Shown: in pieces, positions 1-36,607 of the stretch
Layout of the letters: each line of letters begins with the position of its first letter
How positions within the stretch are numbered: the first letter of the stretch is position 1
Source of the DNA: Macrostomum lignano
Taxonomy: Eukaryota
DNA length: 64,000 nucleotides
NCBI GenBank assembly: GCA_002269645.1
Contig: NIVC01002956.1
Coordinates: 1-64,000 of the forward strand
Direction of reading: 5' to 3'
Translations under genes and position numbers: made by a program
Notes under the pieces: generated by a model
Seen by the model: only the letters and a program-made list of their open reading frames with translations
What the model was told of the DNA's origin: nothing
Databases searched by the model: none

Positions 1-270
1 ATTGAGAGCACTTGGCCATCTGAAGCAACTCCTCATGAGAGCACTTGGCCATCTGAGGCAACTCCTCATTGACAGCACTTGGCCATCTGAGCAACTCCTC
101 ATTGAGAGCACTTGGCCATCTGAGCAACTCATCATTGAGAGCACTTGGCCATCTGAGCAACTCCTCATTGACAGCACTTGGCCATCTGAGCAACTCATCA
201 TTGAGAGCACTTGGCCATCTGAGCAACTCATCATTGACAGCACTTGGCCATCTGAGCAATTCCTCGTTGA
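1..270. repeat. 33-bp minisatellite (ATTGASAGCACTTGGCCATCTGAGCAACTCMTC)n in a lipase intron; runs off the window edge
   Basis: About 8 tandem units read directly. It explains the spurious ORFs 2..286 and 69..356. Confidence 0.95.
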
Positions 271-292
271 GCAAGATTTGCAATAGTCTCAC

Positions 293-2357
293 ATTTCCGT
301 GCACTACTCGCCAGCTGTTGGGCACCAGCCTGTCGAATGCCCTGGCAAAGAAATAGTCACAACTCTCGGCTCGCCGAGCGAGTAGAAGGCCAGACGGCCC
401 GCGGCGTCACGCCATCAATGGCGGCCAGACTGGCTGCTGCGAGGGCCGCCATTGCGCCTCCGAGTGAGTGTCCGGTGACAACAGGCTGTGGTCAGGGTTG
501 GCCCGCATCAGCGCCAGCGTCGGCTCGTGAAGCTGCGGCCAGAGCGCTTTGAATCCGTTGCTAAAGTACGCCTGTACTTTGCCGCCGATCGGGAAGGCCT
601 CCTTGGCATGGCGAGGCCCATGAGGCCCTCAACCAGCAGTTGGCTGCTGCCGGTGGTGCACGAAAGGCGAGCACGATCAGCTTGCGGTCCGGCAGGCGGC
701 CTGTGGTTCAGGTTTTGAACTTTTATTTTTGTTTCTCTATCAATGACTTCTTTAAGTCTGTATGGGGTTTTGCCCAGCAAACTCGAACTTGAAAACAAAC
801 AGCAGCAAAACAGAGTAGGAAAAGCGTCTCAGGGCGCGCCTCAAGACTTGGGATCGAACGTCAGAATCTGAAGCGCTGGCGTCAGCAGCTGCAACTCTTT
901 TATCAGCTGTGACCAGCAGGACTTGACAAGACTCTGTGACCTACCTGCTGGAGTCGCCGACGTCACGACAGGTGGCTAAGTCTGCATTTTTGATGACTTC
1001 CCGCTCAGGGGGTGTCTGAACTGGCGGGATGTCTCTCCGACATTTGCGGAACGGCGTCACAGAAGACACAGTGGTAGAGAGCCGCAGCCTGTCTGTCATG
1101 CATACTGTATGACTGATGGTTGCTGTTGGTAGAATAGAATCTACAACTTAGCTTTTCGGCTTAGATGTAGCTTACTCGTAACAGAAGCATGCAACAGTAA
1201 TTTCTAGCCTTTGCTCTGCTTACATGTCCTCCGTGAGAAAGAGACATTATTTCGGAGCAAAGTCAGCAAATCTAGCTAGAGAACTCACCAACAAAGCCGG
1301 AGCACTCGTCGTGCAGCATGTCGCAGGCTGCCACGCCTTTGACGACGTCAACTAGACGGCCTCCGCCTGCCTGCGCCGCCGGCGGGAAGTTCGCCAGACA
1401 GGGCGCCGGCTCCGGAGCGTAGGCAGCGCCCGAGATAGCGGCGGCCAGCTCGCTCAGCCGGGCGTCGAACTCGTAGTGGCCGTTGTCCGGCTCGTGGCAC
1501 TTGCCGGGATCCACGACCTCCTGCGCATGATTGAACTTAATTACTTATTGAAGCGCCTTACGCTTGTAATTTGAAACTCAGTTATAGAGTTTGAGAGGTC
1601 AAAACTAGCATAAAGCTCATAAAGCTTGATTATGAGCTAGTTTTTATCATTTAGTTCTTAAACTCAGCTGCAGTTTTTGTCGTTTGGTATCCATAATATG
1701 ATATCCATCGGAAGGCTTGACTTGTCGACTGTCGGGTGTGAATCCTTAATTTCATGGCAAATCCCATCTCTTCGTGAATACAAAAAAGTATCTTTAAAAA
1801 AAGCTCAGAAGTGCAAGGAAGACAATTTGTTTTAGGAAGTACGAGCTATTTTTTAAAGCTTTCGTTGTCCATATCGAGCAAGAAGAATACTCGTAACTCC
1901 TGTTGTAACCAATAAGACGCTTTGGTTATAAAGGTTAGCGCAAAGGCTTACAGCGGCCCTTTCACACCATCATCAGTCCTCAAGGGCGCCAATCGGACGA
2001 CAAGCCCATTGCGGCCAATATCTGTGCACGAGCCCTAAATTAATGCGGCCACGCACTGAATCGAATCCGGTACTTTGTCGCAAGATTTAGCTTGTAGACG
2101 CGTTAGACTGAACCTGGCAAAAGGATAGGGAATTGCCCCCGTACCTGCGAGGACGAGCACTTGTTGACGAGGGAGCCGGGCTCGTGGCAGGCCAGGTCGA
2201 TGGGGCACCATCGGCAGGAGGTGCCCAGCCAGGACTGGCTGGTGGCGCACTTGGCGCAGTCGGTGTGACTGGAGCAGCTCTCCCGCCTGCCGGCGCGGCC
2301 AGCCGACGATGCCAGCAGTAGCGCCGGGAGCAGCGCAAGAATCAACGGCCGCAACAT
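293..2357 (-). CDS. Secreted class-3 (fungal-type) lipase with a Cys-rich PSI-like N-terminus; 3' exons lie outside the window
   Basis: Exons 2357-2145, 1520-1289 and 700-293 have GT-AG junctions with matching phases. The protein has a signal peptide (MLRPLILALLPALLLASS), IVLAFRGTT, the nucleophile elbow VTGHSLGGAMAALAA, and YSLGEPRVGD...WRVVHGN. Exon 3 needs five single-base restorations to read through. Confidence 0.85.
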
Positions 2358-3133
2358 TTCCTGGCTGCGTGTACTTTTGTGCTACTTTTCTGTAGGAAGT
2401 CCTTTCTGCTCCTGGCTTATGAAGCCCAAATAGTATCTGGAGAAACTTTAGTCCGTAGCAATGGATAAGCGGACAATCGGCCTATGGAGAGGCTTTTTTG
2501 TTCGCTAAAATAATCGACTCAAGAGGCCATCTGCCAGCACTCTCAGGCAGTTCGAAGGTTGAATCAGCTTTTGGCAAATGCCGTGCGTCTGGTACGTGCC
2601 GCTGCTATTATATAAATTGTATCGCATATCACAGATTTAGTATACTGAATAACATGACTTGAACAACTGCGTGGCTTCATGACCTATACTCTGTCAGATT
2701 TGCCAATTCAAGCAGTTTAAATAGCTGATCTCGCATCACGTGAGGAGCATGTAACCATGACCTGGAAGAAATCCCTCTAATGTCGATCTGAGCATTCGCT
2801 TTGAGCATTCAATGAACGTGCTACGAGTGTTATAGTGACGCAATTACTTCCATGAGCAATCGCATGCATGCATAAACTGTACAAAAGCACGTCACATTGC
2901 TTCTGCTTGAATGTATTGGCGAAGTTAAATGATTTATTGCAAAACACATTCTAAATAAGCATTACAGATCAATTCCGACAGCCAAGCGGTAATTAGTAAC
3001 GGCGCATAAGTTGCGTAGGCAATCGCGCTGAATAGGAGCTGGATAATCCATTGTTACGTCATGTTAAATTTTGAATCAAAATCTCACAAGGCAATATGTT
3101 ACATGAAAGTTCAGAGTACAAAGCTGTTAAAAA

Positions 3134-4367
3134 TTAGATGCATTTGAAGAGGTTTGGAGCAGTCGGGACTGCATGAATTGCAGCTGTTGATCTGTCACCA
3201 AAATCGACCCGAGCGCCCAGGTGAGCAGTCAGCGCCCTCCTCGGACACACCTCCGGGTCCTTGACGTCCCTGTGGAGTAGCACGATGCCGCGCTGCCGAG
3301 CGGTCTCAGTCGCTGTCTCAAGATAGAGGCTGGATTCGAACTTGCGATCGAAGATGTCGAGGTAGGACAGACTCTCGGCCAGGCAGAGAAACTGCAGCAG
3401 GGCTTCGTCGCTGATGCGGGGCACACCGAAAAGGTTGAGGTGTCGCAGGTGCGGGCAGACTGTGCGGATCGACTCCAGGCTGCGGCCGGTGAGGTTGTGA
3501 CAGCAGGTGAGATTCAGCGTCTCCAGCTGGGGGAGGCCCTGCAGCAGCGATCTCAGGTTGGAGTCGGTCATTAGGTAGCCATGGCGACGTAGATTCAGGA
3601 TACGCAGGCCGGGGCATCGGGTGCGAACGATGGCGAGCGACTTCGGTGTCAGGTAGCAGCCTTCGAGGTCCAGGATTTCAAGTGAAGAGGACAGTATGCA
3701 ATCCAGAGTTTGATTGTTGAGCATCTTTTTACTGCGAAGCCGCTGTATGAGTTGGCTGCGGGAGAACAAAAGTTTTTCATGCTTTGCATAATAATTCGAC
3801 TCTGTTTGTCCATATTTATTGTGTAGCAACTTTTGCTTACCTTATCAGATAGTCGTCATTGAAATCGGAGAAGTCGTATTGCTTAATGTTCATGGCAATG
3901 GCATCCAGGCATATTTCTCCAAGTTTTTTTACTCTTGAATTGTCATGAAATGGCTTCTAAAAAGGAAGGAAGTAGTTTTACGTTTAAATCTAACTTGAAC
4001 TGTTAATTGTTGTCATTTAGCTGAAAATATCTATGAATGGCATCTTTAAGACCGAAGTGATACTTACCTCTTCAAGCCGCCGTCCAAACGTAGCTCGAAC
4101 GAATTGCTGACCATTTAAAGCATCCTGCTTTATTTCAAATCGTTTCACCCCTCGAAAGGAGACATCTTCTGTTATTACTGACTTCAACAATTCTTGTGCG
4201 TATCCTTTAAGTAAACTGCACTCAAGAAGCTCGTCGAGATCTACAAAGTCCCCGTCGTTAACTGCAAGACCCTCTTTGGCAGCACCATATCGAAGTAAAT
4301 AAGCAAGAATTTTTCCTATCCGTTTGCGCACAATGGGGTCTAGCTGGCCCCTCAGCTTGTCTTTCAT
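3134..4367 (-). CDS. ~345-aa protein: Tpt1/KptA (RNA 2'-phosphotransferase) N-lobe-like domain fused to an AMN1-like leucine-rich repeat
   Basis: Exons 4367-4068, 3956-3841 and 3755-3134 splice in frame (GAG|gtaagt..tttag|AAG; AG|gtaagc..cgcag|C). Exon 1 has KILAYLLRYGAAKEGL..DGDFVDLDELL..KRFEI..FVRAT. Exons 2-3 have KLGEICLDAI and Cys-containing LRRs (LEILDLEGC, LETLNLTCC, LRHLNLFG). Confidence 0.8.
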
Positions 4368-8123: not shown

Positions 8124-8745
8124 TGGAAAGGATTCCCCTTTTGGTATCCAAGGGAAATCCTAGTTGCTATACGGGAAGGATTCCCCTTTCAGTATCCAAG
8201 GGAAATCCTAGTTGCTATACAGGAAGGATTCCCCTTTCGGTATCCAAGGGAAATCCTAGTTGCTATACAGGAAGGATTCCCCTTTCGGTATCTAAGGGAA
8301 ATCCTAGTTGCTATACAGGAAGGATTCCCCTTTCGGTATCCAAGGGAAATCCTAGTTGCTATACAGGAAGGATTCCCCTTTCGGTATCTAAGGGAAATCC
8401 TAGTTGCTATACAGGAAGGATTCCCCTTTCGGTATCCAAGGGAAATCCTAGTTGCTATACAGGAAGGATTCCCCTTTCGGTATCCAAGGGAAATCCTAGT
8501 TGCTATACAGAAAGGATTCCCCTTTCGGTATCCAAGGGAAATCCTAGTTGCTATACAGGAAGGATTCCCCTTTCGGTATCTAAGGGAAATCCTAGTTGCT
8601 ATACAGGAAGGATTCCCCTTTCGGTATCCAAGGGAAATCCTAGTTGCTATACAGAAAGGATTCCCCTTTCGGTATCCAAGGGAAATCCTAGTTGCTATAC
8701 AGGAAGGATTCCCCTTTCGGTATCCCAGGGAAATCCCAGTTAATA
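8124..8745. repeat. 48-bp minisatellite (~13 units) between the SELENOT stop codon and its SECIS
   Basis: Unit GGATTCCCCTTTCGGTATCCAAGGGAAATCCTAGTTGCTATACAGGAA. It explains ORFs 8121..8783 and 8123..8743. Confidence 0.95.
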
Positions 8746-9553: not shown

Positions 9554-11117
9554 ATGACCACAGCTCACAGGCCGACATTCGACACCGCCCGCGGCGGGCA
9601 GGGCATGCGCGAGCGCGACCTGAGCGCCCAGTCCAAGCAGTACAGCTCGCGCGATCTGCCCAGCCACACCCGCCTGAAATACCGCCAAGACGGCCAGGGC
9701 ACCGCCGAGGATGCCCGAGTCAGCAGCCGCGACTTCAAGCGCGACCTGGAGGACCGCGAGCGCCGACATCGCGGCGGCGGCGGCGGCAGCAGCGCCGATG
9801 AGCCATCGACCTCCTCTTCGTCGTCGAAGCGGGCCCGTCTGACCGACGGCTCCGCTGCGGCGCTGCCGGCCAACCTGGACGCCGACGACGCGGCCGTGGC
9901 CGCCGCCGACTTGGATTCGGACGCCGACTCCGCCGACGAAGGCGACGAGGACGAAGCGGCCGAGTTGATGGCCGAGCTGGCCAAGATTCGGCGCGAGCGG
10001 GAGGCGGAGGCCGCGCGCAGGTGGGTCTTGAAGTGTCCGTGGGCATTGTCCTTGTAGACTCGGCTGGGATTTCCCTTCTAGAGTCAGCTGGGATTTCCCT
10101 TCTAGAGTCAGCTGGGATTTCCCTTCTAGAGTCAGCTGGGATTTCCCTTCTAGAGTCAGCTGGGATTTCCCTTCTAGAGTCAGCTGGGATTTCCCTTCTA
10201 GAGTCAGCTAGGATTTCCCTTGTAGAGTCAGCTGGGATTTCCCTTCTAGAGTCAGCTGGGATTTCACTTCTAGAGTCGGCTGGGATTTCCCTTCTAGAGT
10301 CAGCTGGGATTTCCCTTCTAGAGTTGGCTGGGATTTCCCTTCTAGAGTCGGCTGGGATTTCCCTTCTAGAGTCAGCTAGGATTTCCCTTGTAGAGTCAGC
10401 TGGGATTTCCCTTGTAGAGTCAGCTGGGATTTCCCTTCTAGAGTCGGCTGGGATTTCCCTTCTAGAGTCGGCTGGGATTTCCCTTGTAGAGTCAGCTGGG
10501 ATTTTCCTTGTAGAATAAGCTGGGATTTCCCTTGTAGAGTCGGCTGGGATTTCCCTTGTAGAGTCAGCTGGGATTTCCCTTGTAGAATAAGCTGGGATTT
10601 CCCTTGTAGAGTCGGCTGGGATTTCCCTTGTAGAGTCAGCTGGGATTTCCCTTGTAGAATAAGCTGGAATTTCCCTTGTAGAGTCAGCTGGGATTTCCCT
10701 TGTAGAGTCAGCTGGGATTTCCCTTCTAGAGTCAGCTGGGATTTCCCTTCTAGAGTCAGCTGGGATTTCCCTTCTAGAGTCAGCTGGGATTTCCCTTCTA
10801 GAGTCCCTTCACCATTCTCCAGTCACCTAATTCCCCCTTTCCCCTGCAGAGAGGCTCAGCGGCAGGCAGATGAGGAGCGCATCCGCACGGAGAACATTCT
10901 CAAGGGCAACCCGCTGCTTAACAAGTCCAAGCAGGGCGCCTCGTCCAGCGGCTCGGGAGGCGGCGACTTCAAAGTGAAGCGTCGCTGGAACGACGACGTC
11001 GTATTTAAAAACTGCGCCCGCGACGATGACGAAGGTCGGCAGCGGCCGGCCAGCTTCATTAACGACACGCTGCGCTCGGAATTCCACAAGAAGTTCATGG
11101 ACAAGTACATTAAATAG
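9554..11117 (+). CDS. CWC15: Spliceosome-associated protein CWC15
   Basis: Exons 9554-10020 and 10850-11117. Contains [60 protein letters not shown] and [20 protein letters not shown]. Confidence 0.96.
10058..10803. repeat. 24-bp minisatellite (AGAGTCAGCTGGGATTTCCCTTCT)n in the CWC15 intron
   Basis: About 30 tandem units read directly. Confidence 0.95.
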
Positions 11118-11414: not shown

Positions 11415-12400
11415 TTGGCTCGCTGCCTAATGTGAATCTAAGCTCACTGGCCCAATGCCTAATGGGAGTCTAAGCTCACTGGCTCGCTGCCTAATGTGAA
11501 TCTAAGCTCACTGGCCCAATGCCTAATGGGAGTCTAAGCTCACTGGCTCGCTGCCTAATGGGAATCTAAGCTCACTGGCCCAATGCCTAATGGGAGTCTA
11601 AGCTCACTGGCCCATTGCCTAATGGGAATCTAAGCTCACTGGCCCAATGCCTAATGGGAGTCTATGCTCAATGGTCCACTGTCTAATGAGAGTCTAATCT
11701 CACTAGCCCACTGCCTAATGGTAGTCTAAGTTCACTGGCCCAATGCCTAATGGGAGTGTAAGCTCACTGGCCCAATGCCTAATGGGAGTCTAAGCTCACT
11801 GGCCCAATGCCTAATGGTAGTCTAAGTTCACTGGCCCAATGCCTAATGGGAGTGTAAGCTCACTGGCCCAATGCCTAATGGGAGTCTAAGCTCACTGGCT
11901 CGCTGCCTAATGGGAATCTAAGCTCACTGGCCCAATGCCTAATGGGAGTCTAAGCTCACTGGCCCATTGCCTAATGGGAATCTAAGCTCACTGGCCCAAT
12001 GCCTAATGGGAATCTAAGCTCACTAGCCCACTGCCTAATGGTAGTCTAAGTTCACTGGCCCAATGCCTAATGGGAGTGTAAGCTCACTGGCCCAATGCCT
12101 AATGGGAGTCTAAGCTCACTGGCCCAATGCCTAATGGTAGTCTAAGTTCACTGGCCCAATGCCTAATGGGAGTGTAAGCTCACTGGCCCAATGCCTAATG
12201 GGAGTCTAAGCTCACTGGCCCAATGCCTAATGAGTCTAAGCTCACTGGTCCACTGTCTAATGAGAGTCTAATCTCACTAGCCCACTGCCTAATGGGAGTC
12301 TAAGCTCACTGATATACTGCCTAATCGGAGTCTAAGCTCACTGGCCCAATGCCTAATGAGAGTCTAAGCTCACTGGCCCACTGCCTAATGGGAGCCTAAG
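11415..12400. repeat. 32-bp minisatellite (GCCTAATGGGAGTCTAAGCTCACTGGCCCAAT)n between CWC15 and the endonuclease IV gene
   Basis: About 30 tandem units with higher-order variant patterns. Confidence 0.95.
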
Positions 12401-12488
12401 CTACTAAGCTCCCACTAAAAAGAGCCAACTGAACTTCCCTGACTGCTGCAGCATTTGTGAGTTCAACTCTCTCTGCATTTTCTGTCTC

Positions 12489-15400
12489 ATGGTGCCCACA
12501 CCGCGCAGTCTCAGAAGCAGAAGACCTGCTTCCGCCTCTGCTACAGCAGTGCTCTCAGAGAAGCAGCAGCAAGCGGCGGCAGCTCCCAGCGCTGCCAAGC
12601 GCCAGATAAAAGCAGACACAAAGAAGACTGTTCCAGACAAGAAGAAAGCCAGAAAGCAAAAACAACAGGCAGCCAGTGCTGCATCTCCGCAGCCTCCGAT
12701 GCAGCGGAAACTGCAGCCGGATCTGCTGCTTCTGGGCGCGCACGTCTCAGTGGCCGGCGGCCTGCACCGCGCCTTCGCTAACGCGCGCGCAATCGGCGCT
12801 GACAGCCTGGCGCTATTCGTGCGCAACCAGCGCCGATGGGAGTCGAAGCCGCTGCTGCCCGAGGAGGCCGCCGAGTTTCAGTCGGCGATGCGGAGCAGCG
12901 GTTTCAAGCCGGAGACTGCGCTGCCGCACGGCAGCTACCTCATCAACTGCGCCTCTCCCAATGCCGAGGTCAGGCGGCGCAGTCTGACGGCTTTGATCGA
13001 CGAGATGGACAGGTTGGAAATGCGTAGAAATTGGGAAATTTTCGCTCTGTGCGATCCTGTCCATTGCAGTGTGTTCATGTGCACTGGCTGATGATAATTT
13101 CCCCTGGATAACCAGCAGGGATTTCCCTTGAAAAACCAGAAGGGATTCCCTAGAGAGCCTGCAGGGATTTCCCTTGAAAAACCAGAAGGGATTCCTGAGA
13201 GCCAACAGGGATTCCCTAGAGAGCCAGCAGGGATTTCCCTTGAAAAACCGGAAGCGATTTCCTAGAGAGCCTGCAGGGATTTCCCTGAAAAACCAGAAGG
13301 GATTCCCTAGACAGCCAGCAGGGATTTCCCTTGAAAAACCATAAGGAATTCCCTAGAGAGCCTGCAGGGATTTCCCTTCACAAAACAGAAAGGATTCCCT
13401 AAAGAGCCAGCAGGGATTTCCCTTGAAAAACCAGAAGGGATTCCCTAGAGAGCCTGCAGTGATTTCCCTTGAAAAACCAGAAGGGATTCCTGAGAGCCAA
13501 CAGGGATTCCCTAGAGAGCCAGCAGGGATTTCCCTTGAAAAACCGGAAGCGATTTCCTAGAGAGCCTGCAGGGATTTCCCTGAAAAACCAGAAGGGATTC
13601 CCTAGACAGCCAGCAGGGATTTCCCTTGAAAAACCATAAGGAATTCCCTAGAGAGCCTGCAGGGATTTCCCTTCACAAAACAGAAAGGATTCCCTGGAGA
13701 GCCAGCAGGGATTTCCCTTGAAAAACCAGAAGGGATTCCCTGAAGATCCAACGGGGATTTCCCTTGAAAAACCAGAAGGGATTCCATGAAGAGCCAGCAG
13801 GGATTTCCCTTGAAAAACCAGAAGGGATTCCCTGAAGAGCCAACGGGGATTTCCCTTGAAAAACCAGAAGGGATTCCCTAGAGAGCCAGCAGGGATTACC
13901 CTAAAAACTGAGCTTCCACTGAGCTTCAATGTGAGTTTCAAACCTGCGATACGCGCGAGGAGCCGGGACCTTACCTGTGAACAAACGCGCTTGCAGTTCT
14001 ATTTAACTATTCAAATGCATTCTTTTCTTGCTACTCAAGAGTAGGCGAACTCTTTTTGGCATAACTGCCTGCCTCAACGCTGGCTGAGGGTGCCTTGATT
14101 TTCGGTAGTGTCCAACCCCCCCCCCCTCCCTCCGTGAATGATGGAGAGGACACTGGAGAAATGTACATTCCTTCTATTTATCAGCAAAGGGTATTTTACA
14201 ATTTTTATAAAGTGCCAATTTCCCATTCCCGTCAGGTGCCGCAGGCTGGGCCTCCAGCTGTACAATCTTCACCCCGGCTCAGCTGGTGCCGCTAATCCTG
14301 ACCGGCCGGTCGCCATTGAGCGTCTGGCCGATGCGCTGGCCGAGGCTCTGACTACAGTGCCCGACGTTTGCCTGGTGCTGGAGAACGCGGCAGGACAGGT
14401 GAGCCCCGGGTTCGGAATTCCCCTGTTCCCTGTGAATGAGTGTCCGCCCCCTTCCCCTGTTCCCTGTGAATGATTTCCCGCCCCCTTCCCCTGTTCCCTG
14501 TGAATGATTTCCCGCCCCCTTCCCCTGTTCCCTGTGAATGATTTCCCGCCCCCTTCCCCTGTTCCCTGTGAATGAGTGTCCGCCCCCTTCCCTGTTCCCT
14601 GTGAATGATTTCCCGCCCCCTTCCCCCGTTCCCTGTGAATGATTTCCCGCCCCCTTCCCCTGTTCCCTGTGAATGATTTCCCGCCCCCTTCCCCTGTTCC
14701 CTGTGAATGATTTCGCGCCCCCTTCCCCTGTTCCCTGTGAATGAGTGTCCGCCCCCTTCCCCTGTTCCCTGTGAATGAGTGTCCGCCCCCTTCCCCTGTT
14801 CCCTGTGAATGAGTATCCGCCCCCTTCCCCTGTTCCCTGTGAATGATTTCCCGCCCCCTTCCCCTGTTCCCTGTGAATGATTTCCCGCCCCCTTCCCCTG
14901 TTCCCTGTGAATGAGTGTCCGCCCCTTCCCTGTTCCCTGTGAATGATTTCCCGCCCCCTTCCCCTGTTCCCTGTGAATGAGTGTCCGCCCCCTTCCCCTG
15001 TTCCCTGTGAATGAGTGTCCGCCCCCTTCCCCTGTTCCCTGTGAATGATTTCCCGCCCCCTTCCCCTGTTCCCTGTGAATGATTTCCCGCCCCCTTCCCC
15101 TGTTCCCTGTGAATGATTTCCCGCCCCCTTCCCCTGTTCCCTGTGAATGATTTCCCGCCCCTTCCCCTGTTCCCTGTGAATGAGTGTCCGCCCCCTTCCC
15201 TGTTCCCTGTGAATGATTTCCCGCCCCCTTCCCTGTTCCCTGTGAATGATTTCCCGCCCCCTTCCCCTGTTACCTGTGAATGAGTGTCCGCCCCCTTCTA
15301 GCCTGGCTCCCCAGGCCGTGCTGTTCCCATTATCCAGCAAAAAAATCCCCAACTCCAAAACGCAGGGCGGCAGTCTGGGAGGCAGCTTCACCGAGCTCGG

Positions 15401-16719: not shown

Positions 16720-18390
16720 CGTCTGCAGATCCCCGATCCCATCCCTGTGCAATACCCCCAATCTCATTCATATCGATCCCATCTCCCCAATCACATCCCC
16801 AATCCCATCCCCGATCCCATATCACTGATCCCATCTCCTCGACCCCATCCCCATCCCCATCCCATCTCCTCGACCCCATCCCCATCCCCATCCCATCTCC
16901 CCTATCCCATCCCATCCCCATCCCATCTCCCCTATCCCATCCCATCCCCATCCCATCTCCCCTATCCCATCCCATCTCACCGATCCCATCCCCATCCCAT
17001 CTCCCTGATCCCATCCCCATCCCATCTCCCCGATCCCATCCCCATCCCATCTCCCCTATCCCATCCCATCTCACCGATCCCATCCCCATCCCATCTCACC
17101 GATCCCATCCCCATCCTATCTCCCCGATCCCATCCCCATCCCCATCCCATCTCCCTGATCCCATCCCCATCCCATCCCCGATCCCATATCACTGATCCCA
17201 TCTCCTCGACCCCATCCCCATCCCCATCCCATCTCCCTGATCCCATCCCCATCCCATCTCCCCAATCCCATCCCCGATCCCATATCACTGATCCCATCTC
17301 CTCGACCCCATCCCCATCCCCATCCCATCTCCCCTATCCCATCCCATCCCCATCCCATCTCCCCTATCCCATCCCATCTCACCGATCCCATCCCCATCCT
17401 ATCTCCCCGATCCCATCCCCATCCCATCTCCCTGATCCCATCCCCATCCCATCTCCCTGATCCCATCCCCATCCCATCTCCCCAATCCCATCCCCATCCC
17501 ATCTCCCCAATCACATCCCCAATCCCATCCCCGATCCCAAATCACTGATCCCATCTCCTCGATCCCATCCCCATCCCATCTTCCCGATCCCATCCCCATG
17601 CTATCTCACCGATCCCATCCCCATCCTATCTCCCCGATCCCATCCCCATCCCATCTCCCCTATCACATCCCCAATCCCATCCCCGATCCCAAATCACTGA
17701 TCCCATCTCCTCGATCCCATCCCCATCCCATCTCCTCGATCCCATCCCCATCCCATCTCCCCGATCCCATCCCCATCCCATATCACTGATCCCATCCCCG
17801 ATCCCATCCCCATCCCATCTCCCCGATCCCATCCCCATCCCATATCACTGATCCCATCCCCGATCCCATCCCCATCTCATCTCACCGATCCCATCCCCAT
17901 CCCCATCCCATCTCCCCGATCCCATCTCACCGATCCCATCCCCATCCCATATCACTGATCCCATCCCCGATCCCATCCCCATCTCATCTCCCCGATCCCA
18001 TCCCCATCCCCATCCCATCTCCCCGATCCCATCCCCATCCCATATCACTGATCCCATCCCCGATCCCATCCCCATCTCATCTCACCGATCCCATCCCCAT
18101 CCCATCTCCCCGATCCCATCCCCTATCCCATCCCGATCCCATCCCCGATCCCATTCCCATCCCATATCACTGATCCCATCCCCGATCCCATCCCCATGCC
18201 ATTTCACCGATCCCACCTCCAAACCCATCCCCGATCCAATCCCTATCCCATTTCACCGATCCCACCTCCAAACCCATCCCCGATCCTATTTCCCCGATAC
18301 TATATCACTGATCCCATCTTCCCAATCCCATCTCCGCGAACAAATCCCCGATCCCATCTCCCAGATACCATGCCCGATCCGATCTCCCCG
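16720..18390. repeat. Degenerate (CCCAT/CCCCAT/CCCGAT)n satellite, ~1.7 kb, G-rich on the minus strand
   Basis: Read directly. It produces many spurious PS/PIP- and GMG/WDG-rich ORFs. Confidence 0.95.
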
Positions 18391-19009: not shown

Positions 19010-19700
19010 AGATTGATTAGGGTGAAGGGTGAGAACTGAAAGGGATTAGGGGAGTGAATTAGAATGAGAAAGGATTAAAGGGCGAAGCGATCAGGATTAC
19101 ATAAGAAGGGATTAAAGTGAGAAGGGACTAGAGTGAAAAAGGATTAGAGTGATAAGGGACTTGAGAAGCAATTAGGGTAAGAAGGGACTAGAGTGAGAAG
19201 GGACTAGGGTGAGAAGGGACTAGGGTGAGAAGGGACTAGAGTGAGAAGGGACTAGAGTGAGAAGGGATTAGAGTGAGAAGGGATTGGGGTGAGAATGGAT
19301 CAGAGTGAGTAGGGACTAGAGTGAGAAGGGATTAGAGTGAGAAGGGATTAAGGGTGAGAAGGGACTAGAGTGAAAGGGATTAGAGTGAGAAGGGATTAGA
19401 GTGAGAAGGGATTAAGGGTGAGAAGCGACTAGAGTGAGAAGGGATTAGAGTGAGGAGGGATTAAGGGTGAGAAGCGACTAGAGTGAGAAGGGATTAGAGT
19501 GAGGAGGGATTAAGGGTGAGAAGGGACTAGGGTGAGAAGGGATTAGGTTGAGAATGGATCAGAGTGAGAAGGGACTAGAGTGAGAAGGGATTAGGGTGAG
19601 AATGGATCAGAGTGAGAAGGGATCAGAGTGAGAAGGGACTAGAGTGAGAAGGGATCAGAGTGAGAAGGGATTAGAGTGAGAAGGGATTAGAAGAGAAATG
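19010..19700. repeat. ~16-bp purine-rich minisatellite (AGAGTGAGAAGGGATT)n
   Basis: Read directly. Confidence 0.9.
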
Positions 19701-20663: not shown

Positions 20664-33535
<12,872 letters not shown>

Positions 33536-34712: not shown

Positions 34713-36607
34713 CTATTCACCGGCCACCAGATAGTAGATTATGCTGCAATTGAAGCGGGGTGATCCTATGCAGAATTTTATATTTTAACCTAATTATTAA
34801 GCAATATTGGTAATATAACATAGGCCTATACAAAAGCTAGCAATGAGCTTTAGTATATTTTAATATCATTGTTCATTGATAGCAGTAAAACAAAGCACAG
34901 CATATCTTTTATTTCTATTTAAAGGGAAATCTGGTACTTTTTAGTTTTAGGGAGCGGGGTGGCAGATTCAGGCATTGAGTGAGCAGGGAGCGGTGTGGCA
35001 GATTCAGGCACTGTGGGGAGCAGGGAGCGGTGTGGCAGATCCAGGCACTGAGTGAGCGGGGGGCGGTGTGGCAGATTCAGGCACTGGGGGAGCAGGGAGC
35101 GATGGCAGATCCAGGCACTGGGGGAGCAGGGAGCGGTGTGGCAGATCCAGGCACTGAGTGAGCGGGGGGCGGTGTGGCAGATTCAGGCACTGGGGGAGCA
35201 GGGAGCGATGGCAGATCCAGGCACTGGGGGAGCAGGGAGCGGTGTGGCAGATCCAGGCACTGGGGGAGCAGGGAGCGGTGTGGCAGATTCAGGCACTGGG
35301 GGAGCAGGGAGCGGTGTGGCAGATTCAGGCACTGGGGGAGCAGGGAGCGGTGTGGCAGATTCAGGCACTGAGTGAGCGGGGGGCGGTGTGGCAGATTCAG
35401 GCACTGGGGGAGCAGGGAGCGATGGCAGATCCAGGCACTGGGGGAGCAGGGAGCGGTGTGGCAGATCCAGGCACTGGGGGAGCAGGGAGCGGTGTGGCAG
35501 ATTCAGGCACTGGGGGAGCAGGGAGCGGTGTGGCAGATTCAGGCACTGGGGGAGCAGGGAGCGGTGTGGCAGATTCAGGCACTGGGGGAGCAGGGAGCGG
35601 TGTGGCAGATTCAGGCACTGGGGGAGCAGGGAGCGGTGTGGCAGATTCAGGCACTGGGGGAGCAGGGAGCGGTGTGGCAGATTCAGGCACTGGGGGAGCA
35701 GGGAGCGGTGTGGCAGATCCAGGCACTGGGGGAGCAGGGAGCGGTGTGGCAGATTCAGGCACTGGGGGGAGCAGGGAGCGGTGTGGCAGATTCAGGCACT
35801 GGGGGAGCAGGGAGCGGTGTGGCAGATTCAGGCACTGGGGAGCAGGGAGCGGTGAGGCAGATTCAGGCACTGGGAGAGCAGGGAGCGGTGTGGCAGATTC
35901 AGGCACTGGGGAGCAGGGAGCGGTGTGGCAGATTCAGGCACTGGGAGAGCAGGGAGCGGTGTGGCAGATTCAGGCACTGGGAGAGCAGGGAGCGGTGTGG
36001 CAGATTCAGGCACTGGGGGAGCAGGGAGCGGTGTGGCAGATTCAGGCACTGGGGGGCAGGGAGCGGTGTGGCAGATTCAGGCACTGGGAGAGCAGGGAGC
36101 GATGTAGCAGATCCAGGCACTGTGGGGAGCAGGGAGCGGGGTGGCAGAATCAGGCACTGTGGGGAGCAGGGAGCGGTATGGCAGATTCAGACAGATAAAG
36201 TGAACCCAAACGCACCTGTACAGCAGGACAAAGAACAGAAGCAGGTAATGCACGAGCTTAAAGGTGCAAAAGTACATCGCCCGTTTAATATAGTTGCGAT
36301 TATTGATTTCGAACGGATCGAACAAGCCGATCTGACCTTTCGGCAGGGTTAAGCAGCGATAAATGAGGTAGCAGGGCAGAGGCGCTGACAGCAGGAACAG
36401 GACCCAGTGCAGGGTCAGCAGCAGCAGGATGGGCACAGCAGCGGCCACAGCAGCCTCCGGCCATACCCATTTGTTGAGCCGGTCGCAGGCTTCCCGAACA
36501 TTCAAATAGTCGCAGTCCAGATCGGAGAGGGTCATCAACAGGTAGACAGCCAGGAACAGGAGCGCCAGACTGCCGGCTAGGCAAAGGGACATTACCAGAA
36601 TTGACAT
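34713..36607 (-). CDS. CNIH4: Cornichon homolog 4 (COPII cargo receptor)
   Basis: Exons 36607-36216 and 34743-34713. Contains LMTLSDLDCDYLNVREACDRLNKWVWPE, LHWVLFLL, GLFDPFEINNR, KLVHYLLLFFVLLYS and IIYYLVAGE*. Confidence 0.92.
34763..34946. repeat. ~183-bp AT-rich interspersed repeat; second near-identical direct copy at 38689-38871
   Basis: Both copies run ATCCTATGCAGAATTTT...CTGGTACTTTTTAGTT with only a few differences. Confidence 0.9.
34950..36190. repeat. 36-bp minisatellite in the cornichon intron
   Basis: (GGGAGCGGTGTGGCAGATTCAGGCACTGGGGGAGCA)n. It explains the many ORFs at 34979-36352. Confidence 0.95.

What the first reader, a model, noticed from the sequence alone, without database searches (positions are those of the whole stretch)
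3134..4367. Tpt1/KptA N-lobe fused in frame to a BC-box-like motif and AMN1-type LRRs
Seen: three exons splice in frame. Established: Tpt1 uses an N-terminal RNA-binding lobe and a C-terminal NAD-binding lobe, with an Arg-His-Arg-Arg tetrad. Here only the N-lobe is present: LLRH becomes LLRY, KRF is kept and RAxQGH becomes RATFGR, so it should not be a phosphotransferase. It is followed by KLGEICLDAI, which resembles the Elongin BC-box (LxxxCxxxI), and by LRRs. Inference: possibly a cullin-RING substrate adaptor that recognises RNA or nucleic-acid ends. I do not know this architecture from characterised proteins.
Basis: partly seen in the sequence, partly recalled or inferred. Interest (0 to 1): 0.7.

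Follow-up and report, generated by a model that had tools for sequence, protein, structure and literature searches.

The report
Dead Tpt1 RNA-lobe fused to LRRs
This flatworm gene is real and belongs to an old, unstudied animal and protist family that keeps only the RNA-phosphate-binding half of the enzyme Tpt1, joined to a ubiquitin-ligase-style leucine-rich-repeat module, so it probably reads a phosphate mark on nucleic acid rather than acting as an enzyme.

Summary
On the minus strand, three GT-AG exons (4367-4068, 3956-3841, 3755-3134) join in frame. The product is 99% identical to Macrostomum lignano BOX15_Mlig021724g1. Exon 1 passes Pfam PTS_2-RNA (32.3 bits, cut-off 26) but only over profile positions 4-84 of 177. 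The NAD+ lobe is missing, so it cannot be a phosphotransferase.

The two arginines that clamp the RNA 2'-phosphate in Tpt1 (R26, R76) are kept in 18-19 of 20 relatives. The catalytic His is Tyr here. A three-helix linker and FBXL-type LRRs follow.

The linker is collinear with the Elongin-C-binding SOCS box of yeast Rad7. That match is weak, and the BC-box pattern alone is no better than chance.

The architecture is spread across eukaryotes: flatworm, annelids, molluscs, cnidarians, echinoderm, hemichordate, amphioxus, a nematode, Capsaspora and an amoebozoan. Two members add a C-terminal NADAR (de-ADP-ribosylase) domain. Both intron positions and phases match Capitella.

The window has GGG where two other copies have GGGG, which gives the conserved ...GRFW* end.

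Verdict: a real, uncharacterised family that databases mis-name "2'-phosphotransferase". A role as a ligase adaptor or nucleic-acid-mark reader is plausible but unproven.

The parts
4068..4367 (-). Exon 1 (aa 1-100): Tpt1/KptA RNA-lobe (winged helix) only. R26 is at 4292-4290, Y27 at 4289-4287 and K75-R76-F77 (KRF) at 4145-4137.
   Evidence: Pfam PF01885 scores 34.3 bits against a cut-off of 26, over profile positions 4-82 of 177. The profile alignment to yeast and human Tpt1 structures gives E=3e-8. The AF2 secondary-structure order a1-b1-a2-a3-b2-b3 matches the RNA-lobe description in PMC6333775.
3957..4067 (-). Intron 1 (GT...AG, phase 0), lying exactly between the Tpt1 lobe and the linker.
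   Evidence: Capitella has an intron at the same position and phase, after R110.
3841..3956 (-). Exon 2 (aa 101-139): conserved 'P[FY]H..[ST].V' connector, the BC-box-like helix and the start of helix 2 (FNDDYLI).
   Evidence: AF2 predicts a helix at aa 108-122. The linker+LRR model has pLDDT 94.5.
3897..3926 (-). KLGEICLDAI (aa 111-120), the BC-box-like motif. L112 is invariant. Position 116 is C/S/A in 17 of 20 members. Position 120 is I/V/L in 20 of 20.
   Evidence: Column counts are. It aligns with Rad7 'SLQSLCITKI'. Mutating Rad7 L168 and C172 abolishes its E3 function (PMC4551923).
3756..3840 (-). Intron 2 (GT...AG, phase 2, inside codon S139).
   Evidence: Capitella has an intron at the same position and phase, inside N149.
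3195..3755 (-). Exon 3 up to the conserved stop: helices 2-3 of the linker, about five FBXL-type (Cys-containing) LRRs (aa ~161-300, window ~3691-3272) and a short C-terminal tail.
   Evidence: FBXL2 6o60_C at 1e-13 and 1.7e-83 with the family profile. Rad7 scores 8.6e-22, with an alignment that runs into the linker.
3208..3210 (-). G-run that is one base shorter than in two other M. lignano copies. It shifts the frame and replaces the conserved ...GRFW* end with a 24-aa non-conserved tail.
   Evidence: Alignment of the window with L001 and L002. Conserved C-termini of the orthologues.
3134..3194 (-). Frameshifted extension of the ORF as read in this window (part of VDFGDRSTAAIHAVPTAPNLFKCI*). 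It is 3' UTR in the GGGG copies.

Best explanation
The locus encodes a non-catalytic descendant of eukaryotic Tpt1/TRPT1. It keeps the winged-helix RNA lobe, with the two arginines that clamp the junction 2'-phosphate and the Lys that stacks on the base. It has lost the NAD+/ADP-ribosyltransferase lobe. In that lobe's place is a three-helix 'adaptor box' followed by about five FBXL/Rad7-type leucine-rich repeats.

Most likely mechanism (inferred, not shown): the Tpt1-derived lobe docks on a phosphate mark on RNA or DNA. Candidates are a 2'-PO4, a terminal phosphate, or a phospho-ADP-ribosyl adduct. The box+LRR module then couples that recognition to an effector. In Capsaspora and one environmental relative the effector is a NADAR de-ADP-ribosylase fused in cis. 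In animals, where NADAR is not fused, the effector is most likely a cullin-RING ligase core recruited through the Rad7-like BC-box helix (Elongin C), or less likely Skp1.

Shown here: the gene structure, the domain content, the loss of catalytic parts, the conservation pattern and the phyletic spread.

Inferred: nucleic-acid binding, Elongin C binding and the biological role.
For: Gene and domains:
- The in-frame three-exon model is identical to the annotated protein.
- PF01885 matches the N-lobe only, above its cut-off.
- The tetrad mapping to yeast Tpt1 is R23/H24/R71 to R26/Y27/R76, with S15-K16 on G18-K19.
- In CthTpt1, Arg18 and Arg68 make bidentate contacts to the transferred phosphate. 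His19 touches only the 3'-PO4, and Lys11 stacks on the base (PMC6333775).

Selection:
- The N-lobe is the best-conserved part of the protein: 36% mean pairwise identity, against 34% for the linker and 31% for the LRRs.
- R26 is kept in 19 of 20 members, R76 in 18 of 20, R91 and A92 in 18 of 20, and K19 is K or R in 16 of 20.

Age of the family:
- The same architecture occurs in about 20 clusters at 50% identity, from Spiralia, Cnidaria, Ambulacraria, amphioxus, a nematode, Capsaspora and Amoebozoa.
- Intron positions and phases are shared with Capitella.

Link to ADP-ribose and nucleic-acid chemistry:
- P0117 (Capsaspora CAOG_08465) and P0039 add a NADAR domain, at 97.7 and 104 bits.
- Eukaryotic NADARs reverse guanine ADP-ribosylation (PMC11543638).
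- A KptA-NADAR functional link has been predicted before (PMC9503650).

Adaptor box:
- The linker+LRR model has pLDDT 94.5, with three helices before LRR1.
- The best structural neighbours are all CRL receptors, and Rad7-Elc1 has the highest TMq at 0.70.
- Rad7 is the only PDB chain whose profile alignment runs into the linker. The BC-box helix is collinear, with L112 and C116 on Rad7 L168 and C172.
Against: - No binding experiment or complex prediction was possible.
- The Rad7 box match is weak: 16 bits and E=0.078 for the linker alone, and 5-8 bits for the helix.
- The strict BC-box consensus is met at the linker position in only 4 of 20 members. The regex is expected by chance.
- M. lignano lacks the downstream Pro that 14 of 20 members have (FNDD instead of FPDE).
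- No SOCS-box, Elongin_A or F-box Pfam profile hits any member tested.
- A ligase receptor with an enzyme fused in cis (NADAR) is unusual and fits a plain scaffold role as well.
- An E. coli NADAR did not cleave ADP-ribose from RNA phosphate ends (PMC11833690), so the simplest 'Tpt1-product eraser' idea is not supported.
- The catalytic His is replaced by Tyr in 14 of 20 members, and Hydractinia has K-R instead of R-Y, so the pocket is not strictly fixed.
- The N-lobe model confidence is only moderate (pLDDT 67-86).
Confidence: 0.45

Rival explanations
1. It is a scaffold or targeting subunit, not a ubiquitin-ligase receptor. On this view the three-helix linker is just the N-terminal cap of the LRR solenoid. 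The LRRs hold a partner enzyme: NADAR in cis in Capsaspora, and a free-standing hydrolase or repair enzyme in trans in animals. The Tpt1 lobe brings that enzyme to marked RNA or DNA. No cullin is involved.
For: - NADAR fusions occur in P0117 and P0039.
- No F-box, SOCS-box or Elongin_A Pfam profile hits.
- The BC-box regex has no statistical weight.
- Many long LRR proteins of unknown function carry the same 'SLxxLC...LPxEL' pre-LRR module.
Against: - The linker is as conserved as the LRRs (34% against 31%), with an invariant Leu and Asp.
- It is collinear with the Rad7 box, which does bind Elc1.
- Every close structural neighbour is a CRL receptor.
- No NADAR gene lies in the 64-kb window.
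Confidence: 0.3
2. It is an SCF-type receptor. On this view the linker is a degenerate F-box that binds Skp1, with 'FPDEYLI..I..RL' in most members standing for the F-box H1 motif 'LPDELL..IF..L'. The protein would then be an FBXL paralogue with a Tpt1-lobe substrate or ligand module.
For: - The top sequence and structure matches of the LRRs are FBXL2, FBXL17 and SKP2.
- NCBI names two members 'F-box/LRR-repeat protein 7-like' and 'F-box protein SKP2B-like'.
- The spacing from FPDE to LDL is about 38 aa. From memory of the SKP2 sequence, the equivalent spacing there is about 43 aa. This was not computed.
Against: - No F-box Pfam hit at E<=10 in any member scanned.
- HMM alignments to SKP2 and FBXL2 start only at LRR1 (query 58 or 68 onward), whereas Rad7's alignment enters the linker.
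- Only two helices follow FPDE, whereas an F-box has three.
- M. lignano has FNDD.
Confidence: 0.15
3. The Tpt1-derived lobe no longer binds nucleic acid. It has been re-used as a protein-interaction or small-ligand domain, and the conserved arginines serve another purpose such as binding a phosphoprotein or nucleotide.
For: - His is replaced by Tyr in most members, and QGHS by xGRx.
- Lys69 of yeast Tpt1 is not conserved here (position 74).
- Winged-helix domains are versatile.
Against: - Both phosphate-clamp arginines and the base-stacking Lys are retained.
- The least-derived members (Capsaspora, P0039, P0056) keep LRH and GHS intact.
- The NADAR fusion points to nucleic-acid or ADP-ribose chemistry.
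Confidence: 0.1

Closest known systems
Tpt1/KptA/TRPT1 RNA 2'-phosphotransferase (Pfam PF01885; structures 6E3A, 7YW4 and 7YW3)
   Same: The N-terminal winged-helix RNA lobe is homologous: above the Pfam cut-off, and E=3e-8 to yeast Tpt1 with the family profile. The two phosphate-clamping Arg, the base-stacking Lys and the 'RA' strand are kept. The best matches are eukaryotic Tpt1/TRPT1, so it is probably a duplicate of the eukaryotic gene.
   Different: The whole NAD+-binding ART lobe (profile positions 85-177) and the fourth tetrad Arg are absent. The His is Tyr. QGHS is FGRR. No phosphotransfer or ADP-ribosylation is possible. The UniRef name '2'-phosphotransferase' is therefore wrong.
Yeast Rad7 (SOCS/BC-box + LRR subunit of the Rad7-Rad16-Elc1-Cul3 GG-NER E3; PDB 5ZB2)
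   Same: The layout is the same: BC-box helix, two further helices, then Cys-containing LRRs. Rad7 is the only solved structure whose profile alignment extends into the linker. The anchors V-x2-L-x3-C-x3-I-x2-N-I are shared, and L112 and C116 fall on L168 and C172. It has the highest query TM-score (0.70).
   Different: The match over the box is weak (E=0.078). Rad7 has a roughly 25-aa insert after the box, many more LRRs and no Tpt1 lobe. Binding to Elongin C is untested here.
F-box/LRR (FBXL) proteins: FBXL2, FBXL17 and SKP2
   Same: The LRRs are of the same Cys-containing subtype (1.7e-83 to FBXL2 with the family profile). The overall arrangement is a three-helix box followed by an LRR solenoid.
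   Different: No F-box profile match. The alignments start at LRR1. The repeat number is far smaller (about 5).
NADAR (PF08719) guanine de-ADP-ribosylases
   Same: Two members of this family (Capsaspora CAOG_08465 and the environmental P0039) carry a bona fide NADAR domain after the LRRs. This ties the family to NAD/ADP-ribose nucleic-acid chemistry.
   Different: The M. lignano protein and all the animal members identified here have no NADAR domain. None is encoded elsewhere in the window.

Membership tests
Tpt1/KptA RNA 2'-phosphotransferase (PF01885) | N-terminal RNA-binding (winged-helix) lobe that matches the family profile | tested here: met
   32.3 bits for the whole protein and 34.3 bits for exon 1, against a cut-off of 26, over profile positions 4-84. 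E=3e-8 to 7yw4 with the family profile.
Tpt1/KptA RNA 2'-phosphotransferase (PF01885) | C-terminal NAD+-binding ADP-ribosyltransferase lobe | tested here: not met
   Profile positions 85-177 are unmatched. Residues 100-325 are the linker and LRRs.
Tpt1/KptA RNA 2'-phosphotransferase (PF01885) | Invariant Arg-His-Arg-Arg catalytic tetrad | tested here: not met
   R26 and R76 are present, the His is Y27, and the fourth Arg is absent together with the NAD+ lobe.
BC-box / SOCS-box cullin-RING substrate receptors (Rad7, ZYG11, VHL, SOCS) | BC-box consensus (A/P/S/T)-L-x3-(C/S/A)-x3-(A/I/L/V) | tested here: inconclusive
   In KLGEICLDAI the L, C and I fit, but the first residue is K. In the family L is 20/20, C/S/A is 17/20 and the final hydrophobic residue is 20/20, yet the strict consensus is met at this site in only 4 of 20. 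The regex is expected by chance.
BC-box / SOCS-box cullin-RING substrate receptors (Rad7, ZYG11, VHL, SOCS) | Homology of the box to one that is structurally shown to bind Elongin C | tested here: inconclusive
   Rad7 (5zb2_A) is the top PDB hit of the linker profile, but at E=0.078. The match is collinear, and the LRR match is 8.6e-22.
BC-box / SOCS-box cullin-RING substrate receptors (Rad7, ZYG11, VHL, SOCS) | Physical binding to Elongin B/C and a cullin | not testable with these tools
   No multimer prediction or experiment was available.
F-box/LRR (FBXL) proteins | F-box domain matching PF00646, PF12937 or related profiles | tested here: not met
   No F-box family at E<=10 for the window protein, its isolated linker, P0002 or P0003. 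None at E<=0.01 for four more members.
F-box/LRR (FBXL) proteins | Cys-containing (LRR_CC/FBXL-type) leucine-rich repeats | tested here: met
   FBXL2 at 1e-13 and 1.7e-83 with the profile. Foldseek top hits are FBXL2, FBXL17 and SKP2.
AMN1 family | Closest LRR relatives are AMN1 orthologues | not tested
None of the searches returned an AMN1 reference sequence.
NADAR-fused members of this family | C-terminal NADAR domain (PF08719) | tested here: not met
   No NADAR hit in the M. lignano protein or in the six-frame window. It is present in P0117 and P0039.

The most novel reading that the evidence does not exclude
This would be an ancient eukaryotic 'reader' pseudoenzyme. A Tpt1-derived winged-helix domain would recognise RNA or DNA carrying a 2'-phosphate, a terminal phosphate or a phospho-ADP-ribose adduct. 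It would hand the marked molecule, or the proteins bound to it, to a cullin-RING ubiquitin ligase through a Rad7-like Elongin-C box. In unicellular relatives the hand-over would be to a fused NADAR hydrolase. That would be the first ubiquitin-ligase receptor aimed at a nucleic-acid phosphate or ADP-ribose mark, and the first known non-catalytic Tpt1 paralogue.
Probability: 0.2. Interest if true: 0.85.

Novelty: new variant of a known kind. Interest (0 to 1): 0.6.

Why it matters
Tpt1/TRPT1 is conserved in animals, although animal tRNA splicing does not need it. Its ability to ADP-ribosylate nucleic-acid phosphate ends has no known physiological reader.

This family keeps only the phosphate-recognising lobe and holds it under purifying selection from Amoebozoa to amphioxus. 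It is joined to a ligase-receptor-like LRR module, and in some lineages to a NADAR de-ADP-ribosylase. That makes it a concrete candidate for such a reader and a direct experimental handle.

There is also a practical point. UniRef currently names these proteins '2'-phosphotransferase', which is an enzyme annotation they cannot fulfil.

The family's absence among the vertebrate, insect and fungal sequences returned here (from knowledge and the taxa, not an exhaustive test) would explain why it has escaped study.

Tried and rejected
- Word-indexed homology searches with linker+LRR, as a single sequence and as a 15-sequence profile, returned almost nothing new. The family was found only through the exhaustive representative search.
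- Pfam on the isolated linker gave only a spurious TTI1 hit below cut-off.
- BC-box regex statistics: 0.47 strict and 2.5 relaxed matches are expected per shuffled sequence, so the motif has no weight of its own.
- Foldseek on the full model and on the high-confidence linker+LRR model could not separate an F-box from a BC-box. FBXL2, SKP2 and Rad7 all give TMq 0.66-0.70.
- I looked for a neighbouring NADAR gene in the window and in the M. lignano and Capitella loci. None was found.
- I tried to read selection from the three M. lignano copies. This was uninformative: there is one substitution and one indel in 1234 bp, and the introns are equally identical.
- Literature searches on Tpt1/KptA + LRR, AMN1 + Elongin, KptA + NADAR, PTS_2-RNA and the locus tags found no description of the architecture.
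- Gene-model artefact or pseudogene: rejected for the family, given the conserved introns, the transcript evidence in other species and the conservation of all three parts. For this particular window copy the C-terminal frameshift remains unexplained. It could be a homopolymer assembly error or a real allele.
Full report
**What is in the sequence**

The window is eukaryotic and comes from the flatworm Macrostomum lignano. The spliced product of the finding is 99% identical to the GenBank protein BOX15_Mlig021724g1 (P0001). The surrounding 8.5 kb is 99.0% and 96.7% identical to two contigs of assembly GCA_002269645.1.

On the minus strand, three exons (4367-4068, 3956-3841, 3755-3134) are bounded by canonical GT-AG introns and join in frame to give 345 aa.

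**Domain content**

Exon 1 (aa 1-100):
- It passes the Pfam gathering threshold for PTS_2-RNA (Tpt1/KptA). Scores are 32.3 bits for the whole protein and 34.3 bits for exon 1 alone, against a cut-off of 26.
- Only profile positions 4-84 of 177 are matched. The NAD+-binding lobe is entirely absent.

Mapping to Tpt1 catalytic residues:
- A three-species profile of this region hits yeast Tpt1 (7yw4) at E=3e-8 and mammalian TRPT1 structures next.
- In that alignment yeast S15-K16, R23-H24 and R71 fall on G18-K19, R26-Y27 and R76.
- According to the CthTpt1 structure paper (PMC6333775), the equivalents of R23 and R71 make bidentate contacts to the transferred 2'-phosphate. The His touches only the 3'-phosphate. 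The Lys stacks on the junction base. The fourth tetrad Arg sits in the NAD+ lobe.

Fold of the N-lobe:
- The AF2 model gives the order a1-b1-a2-a3-b2-b3, as expected for the Tpt1 winged-helix lobe.
- Confidence is moderate, pLDDT 67-86.

Residues 161-300:
- They form about five Cys-containing LRRs of the FBXL type. FBXL2 scores 1e-13 and 1.7e-83 with a family profile.

**The 3' end**

The annotated protein ends ...HLGARGRFW, whereas the window reads ...HLGARVDFGDRSTAAIHAVPTAPNLFKCI.
- The cause is a single base. The window has GGG at 3210-3208 where both GenBank copies have GGGG.
- With four G the stop is at 3197-3195, and the end matches those of the Capitella (...GQFW), Dreissena (...GKIW) and other mollusc (...PNFGKVW) proteins.
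- It could be a homopolymer assembly error or a real allele. I cannot tell which.

**Is the fusion real?**

Several independent lines say yes.
1. The public M. lignano gene model has the same three exons.
2. The residues encoded across junction 1 (RRLEE|KPFHDNSRV) align with a conserved block in all relatives (RRFERNPYHDGTKV).
3. Capitella teleta has introns at the same two positions and in the same phases: phase 0 after R110, and phase 2 inside N149.
4. The Soliformovum member is a TRINITY transcript.
5. Several members are full-length ORFs on 1.1-1.8-kb contigs with no room for introns. These are probably assembled mRNAs, which is an inference.

**A family, not a one-off**

An exhaustive profile search of 1.84 billion representatives found about 20 clusters at 50% identity with a single end-to-end match. 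Source records place them in these taxa:
- Flatworm: Macrostomum.
- Annelids: Capitella, Dimorphilus.
- Molluscs: Dreissena, Liolophura, Elysia, Lottia, Sinanodonta, Plakobranchus.
- Cnidarians: Hydractinia, Rhopilema.
- A sea star (Patiria), an acorn worm (Saccoglossus) and amphioxus (Branchiostoma).
- A dorylaimid nematode: Soboliphyme.
- The filasterean Capsaspora and the amoebozoan Soliformovum.

All are 'hypothetical' or 'uncharacterized'. UniRef auto-names them '2'-phosphotransferase'. NCBI calls two of them 'F-box/LRR-repeat protein 7-like' and 'F-box protein SKP2B-like'.

I found no paper that describes the architecture.

**Conservation**

Among 16 full-length members the Tpt1 lobe is the most conserved part. 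Mean pairwise identity is 36% for the lobe, 34% for the linker, 31% for the LRRs and 13% for the tail.

Key positions in the lobe:
- R26 is kept in 19 of 20 members, R76 in 18 of 20, and R91-A92 in 18 of 20. K19 is K or R in 16 of 20.
- Position 27 is Tyr in 14 members and His in 5.
- The members with His include Capsaspora and two environmental proteins that also keep YGHS. They look least derived.

So the phosphate-binding face of the lobe is under selection, although catalysis is impossible.

**The NADAR link**

Two members, Capsaspora CAOG_08465 (P0117) and the environmental P0039, carry a bona fide NADAR domain after the LRRs, at 97.7 and 104 bits against a cut-off of 35.
- NADARs hydrolyse ADP-ribose from guanine in DNA and RNA. 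[quoted passage not shown]
- A functional link between KptA and NADAR in RNA-end processing has been predicted from prokaryotic and viral contexts (PMC9503650).
- This is the strongest contextual clue that the family works on modified nucleic acid.
- The M. lignano protein has no NADAR, and none is encoded in the window.

**The linker**

Residues 106-160 form three helices that pack in front of LRR1. The linker+LRR model has pLDDT 94.5 and pTM 0.88.

The family consensus is V-x-[RST]-L-L-E-x-C-x-x-x-I-x-x-N-I ... F-P-D-E-Y-L-I-x-x-I-x-x-R-L-K-x-x-K-K-L-x-N-x-x-L-x-x-L-L.

Evidence against reading much into the motif:
- As a regex the BC-box has no weight. The strict form is expected 0.47 times, and the relaxed form 2.5 times, per shuffled sequence.
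- The strict form is met at this site in only 4 of 20 members.
- No F-box, SOCS-box or Elongin_A Pfam profile hits any member.

What does carry some weight is position and collinearity:
- The linker profile's best hit in the whole PDB is yeast Rad7 in the Rad7-Elc1 crystal structure (5zb2_A, E=0.078).
- With linker+LRR, Rad7 scores 8.6e-22. It is the only chain whose alignment runs into the linker, with query 33-161 on chain 50-179.
- The first helix aligns as VKKLGEICLDAIAMNI with SVSSLQSLCITKISENI. This puts L112 and C116 on Rad7 L168 and C172.
- Mutating those two Rad7 residues abolishes its Elongin-C/Cul3 ligase function (PMC4551923).

Foldseek gives only cullin-RING receptors as close neighbours: FBXL2, FBXL17, SKP2, Rad7 (highest TMq, 0.70) and ZYG11B-EloBC. 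It cannot tell an F-box from a BC-box.

The same pre-LRR module occurs in many long, unnamed LRR proteins.

**Interpretation**

- Shown: a conserved, spliced gene for a catalytically dead Tpt1 RNA-lobe joined to an adaptor-box-like linker and FBXL/Rad7-type LRRs.
- Inferred: the lobe still docks on a nucleic-acid phosphate mark. The box+LRR module couples this to an effector, which is NADAR in cis in Capsaspora.
- In animals the effector is most likely an Elongin-C-based cullin ligase. I give this whole chain 0.45.
- Main rival (0.30): the linker is only an LRR cap, and the protein is a targeting scaffold for a hydrolase or repair enzyme.
- Skp1/SCF variant: 0.15.
- Loss of nucleic-acid binding: 0.10.

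It was right on non-catalysis and on the unusual architecture. It is plausible but unproven on the ligase role. It missed the family's breadth, the NADAR link and the frameshifted end.

**Novelty and interest**

Both building blocks are known. The combination, and a Tpt1 paralogue reduced to its RNA lobe, are not described in anything I could search. I rate it a new variant of a known kind, with interest 0.6. It offers a testable candidate reader for RNA 2'-phosphate or phospho-ADP-ribose marks, and it corrects a systematic database mis-annotation.

Noticed in passing
window 3208-3210 (minus strand), affecting 3134-3197: There is a one-base difference in a G-run (GGG here, GGGG in two GenBank copies of the locus). 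It frameshifts the last codons and removes a C-terminal ...G-[KRQ]-[FIV]-W motif that is conserved in flatworm, annelid and mollusc orthologues (molluscs: ENPC.LLPNFGK[IV]W). This may be an assembly error or a real allele. The function of the conserved C-terminal Trp tail is unknown.
   Followed up: partly
window 3134-4367 compared with L001/L002 6001-7240: Across the 1234-bp gene, introns included, the three M. lignano copies differ by only one substitution (window 4101, C/T) and the G indel. The flanks differ by 1-3%. The introns are as invariant as the exons.
   Followed up: partly
window ~2103-2357 (minus strand) and downstream: The next gene downstream starts at about 2357. It has a signal peptide and a Cys-rich stretch (MLRPLILALLPALLLASSAG...CAKCATSQSWLGTSCRWCP). 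It corresponds to the 408-aa Lipase_3 (PF01764) gene annotated in the GenBank copies. Upstream neighbours there are an Rdx-family (PF10262) gene and Cwf_Cwc_15.
   Followed up: no
window 1-271, 8128-8741, 10050-10805, 11424-12402, 13112-13903, 14418-15298, 19104-19691, 20897-21460, 28614-28950, 34949-36190: The window has an unusually dense set of minisatellite arrays (periods 16-48 bp, 0.3-1.2 kb each). Several unrelated units share a GGGATTCCC / GGGAAATCCC-like palindromic core. The array copy number differs between the window and the GenBank copies.
   Followed up: no
window 16774-18390: This is a 1.6-kb C-rich degenerate microsatellite or minisatellite (CCCAT / TCCCCAATCCCA units). It gives a GC skew of -0.64 over 16-18 kb, the strongest compositional anomaly in the window.
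   Followed up: no
P0005 (487 aa, top hit of the representative search; organism not looked up): This member is nearly identical to the Branchiostoma floridae member P0007, but the 'CMLHKLRRRRQLTN...DMYFTNGTARIL..KC' segment (linker helix 2-3 plus LRR1) is repeated four times. It could be a tandem exon duplication or a mis-assembly.
   Followed up: no
window 2933-2938 (minus strand): An AATAAA lies about 195-260 nt downstream of the two possible stop codons. It is a candidate polyadenylation signal for the gene.
   Followed up: no
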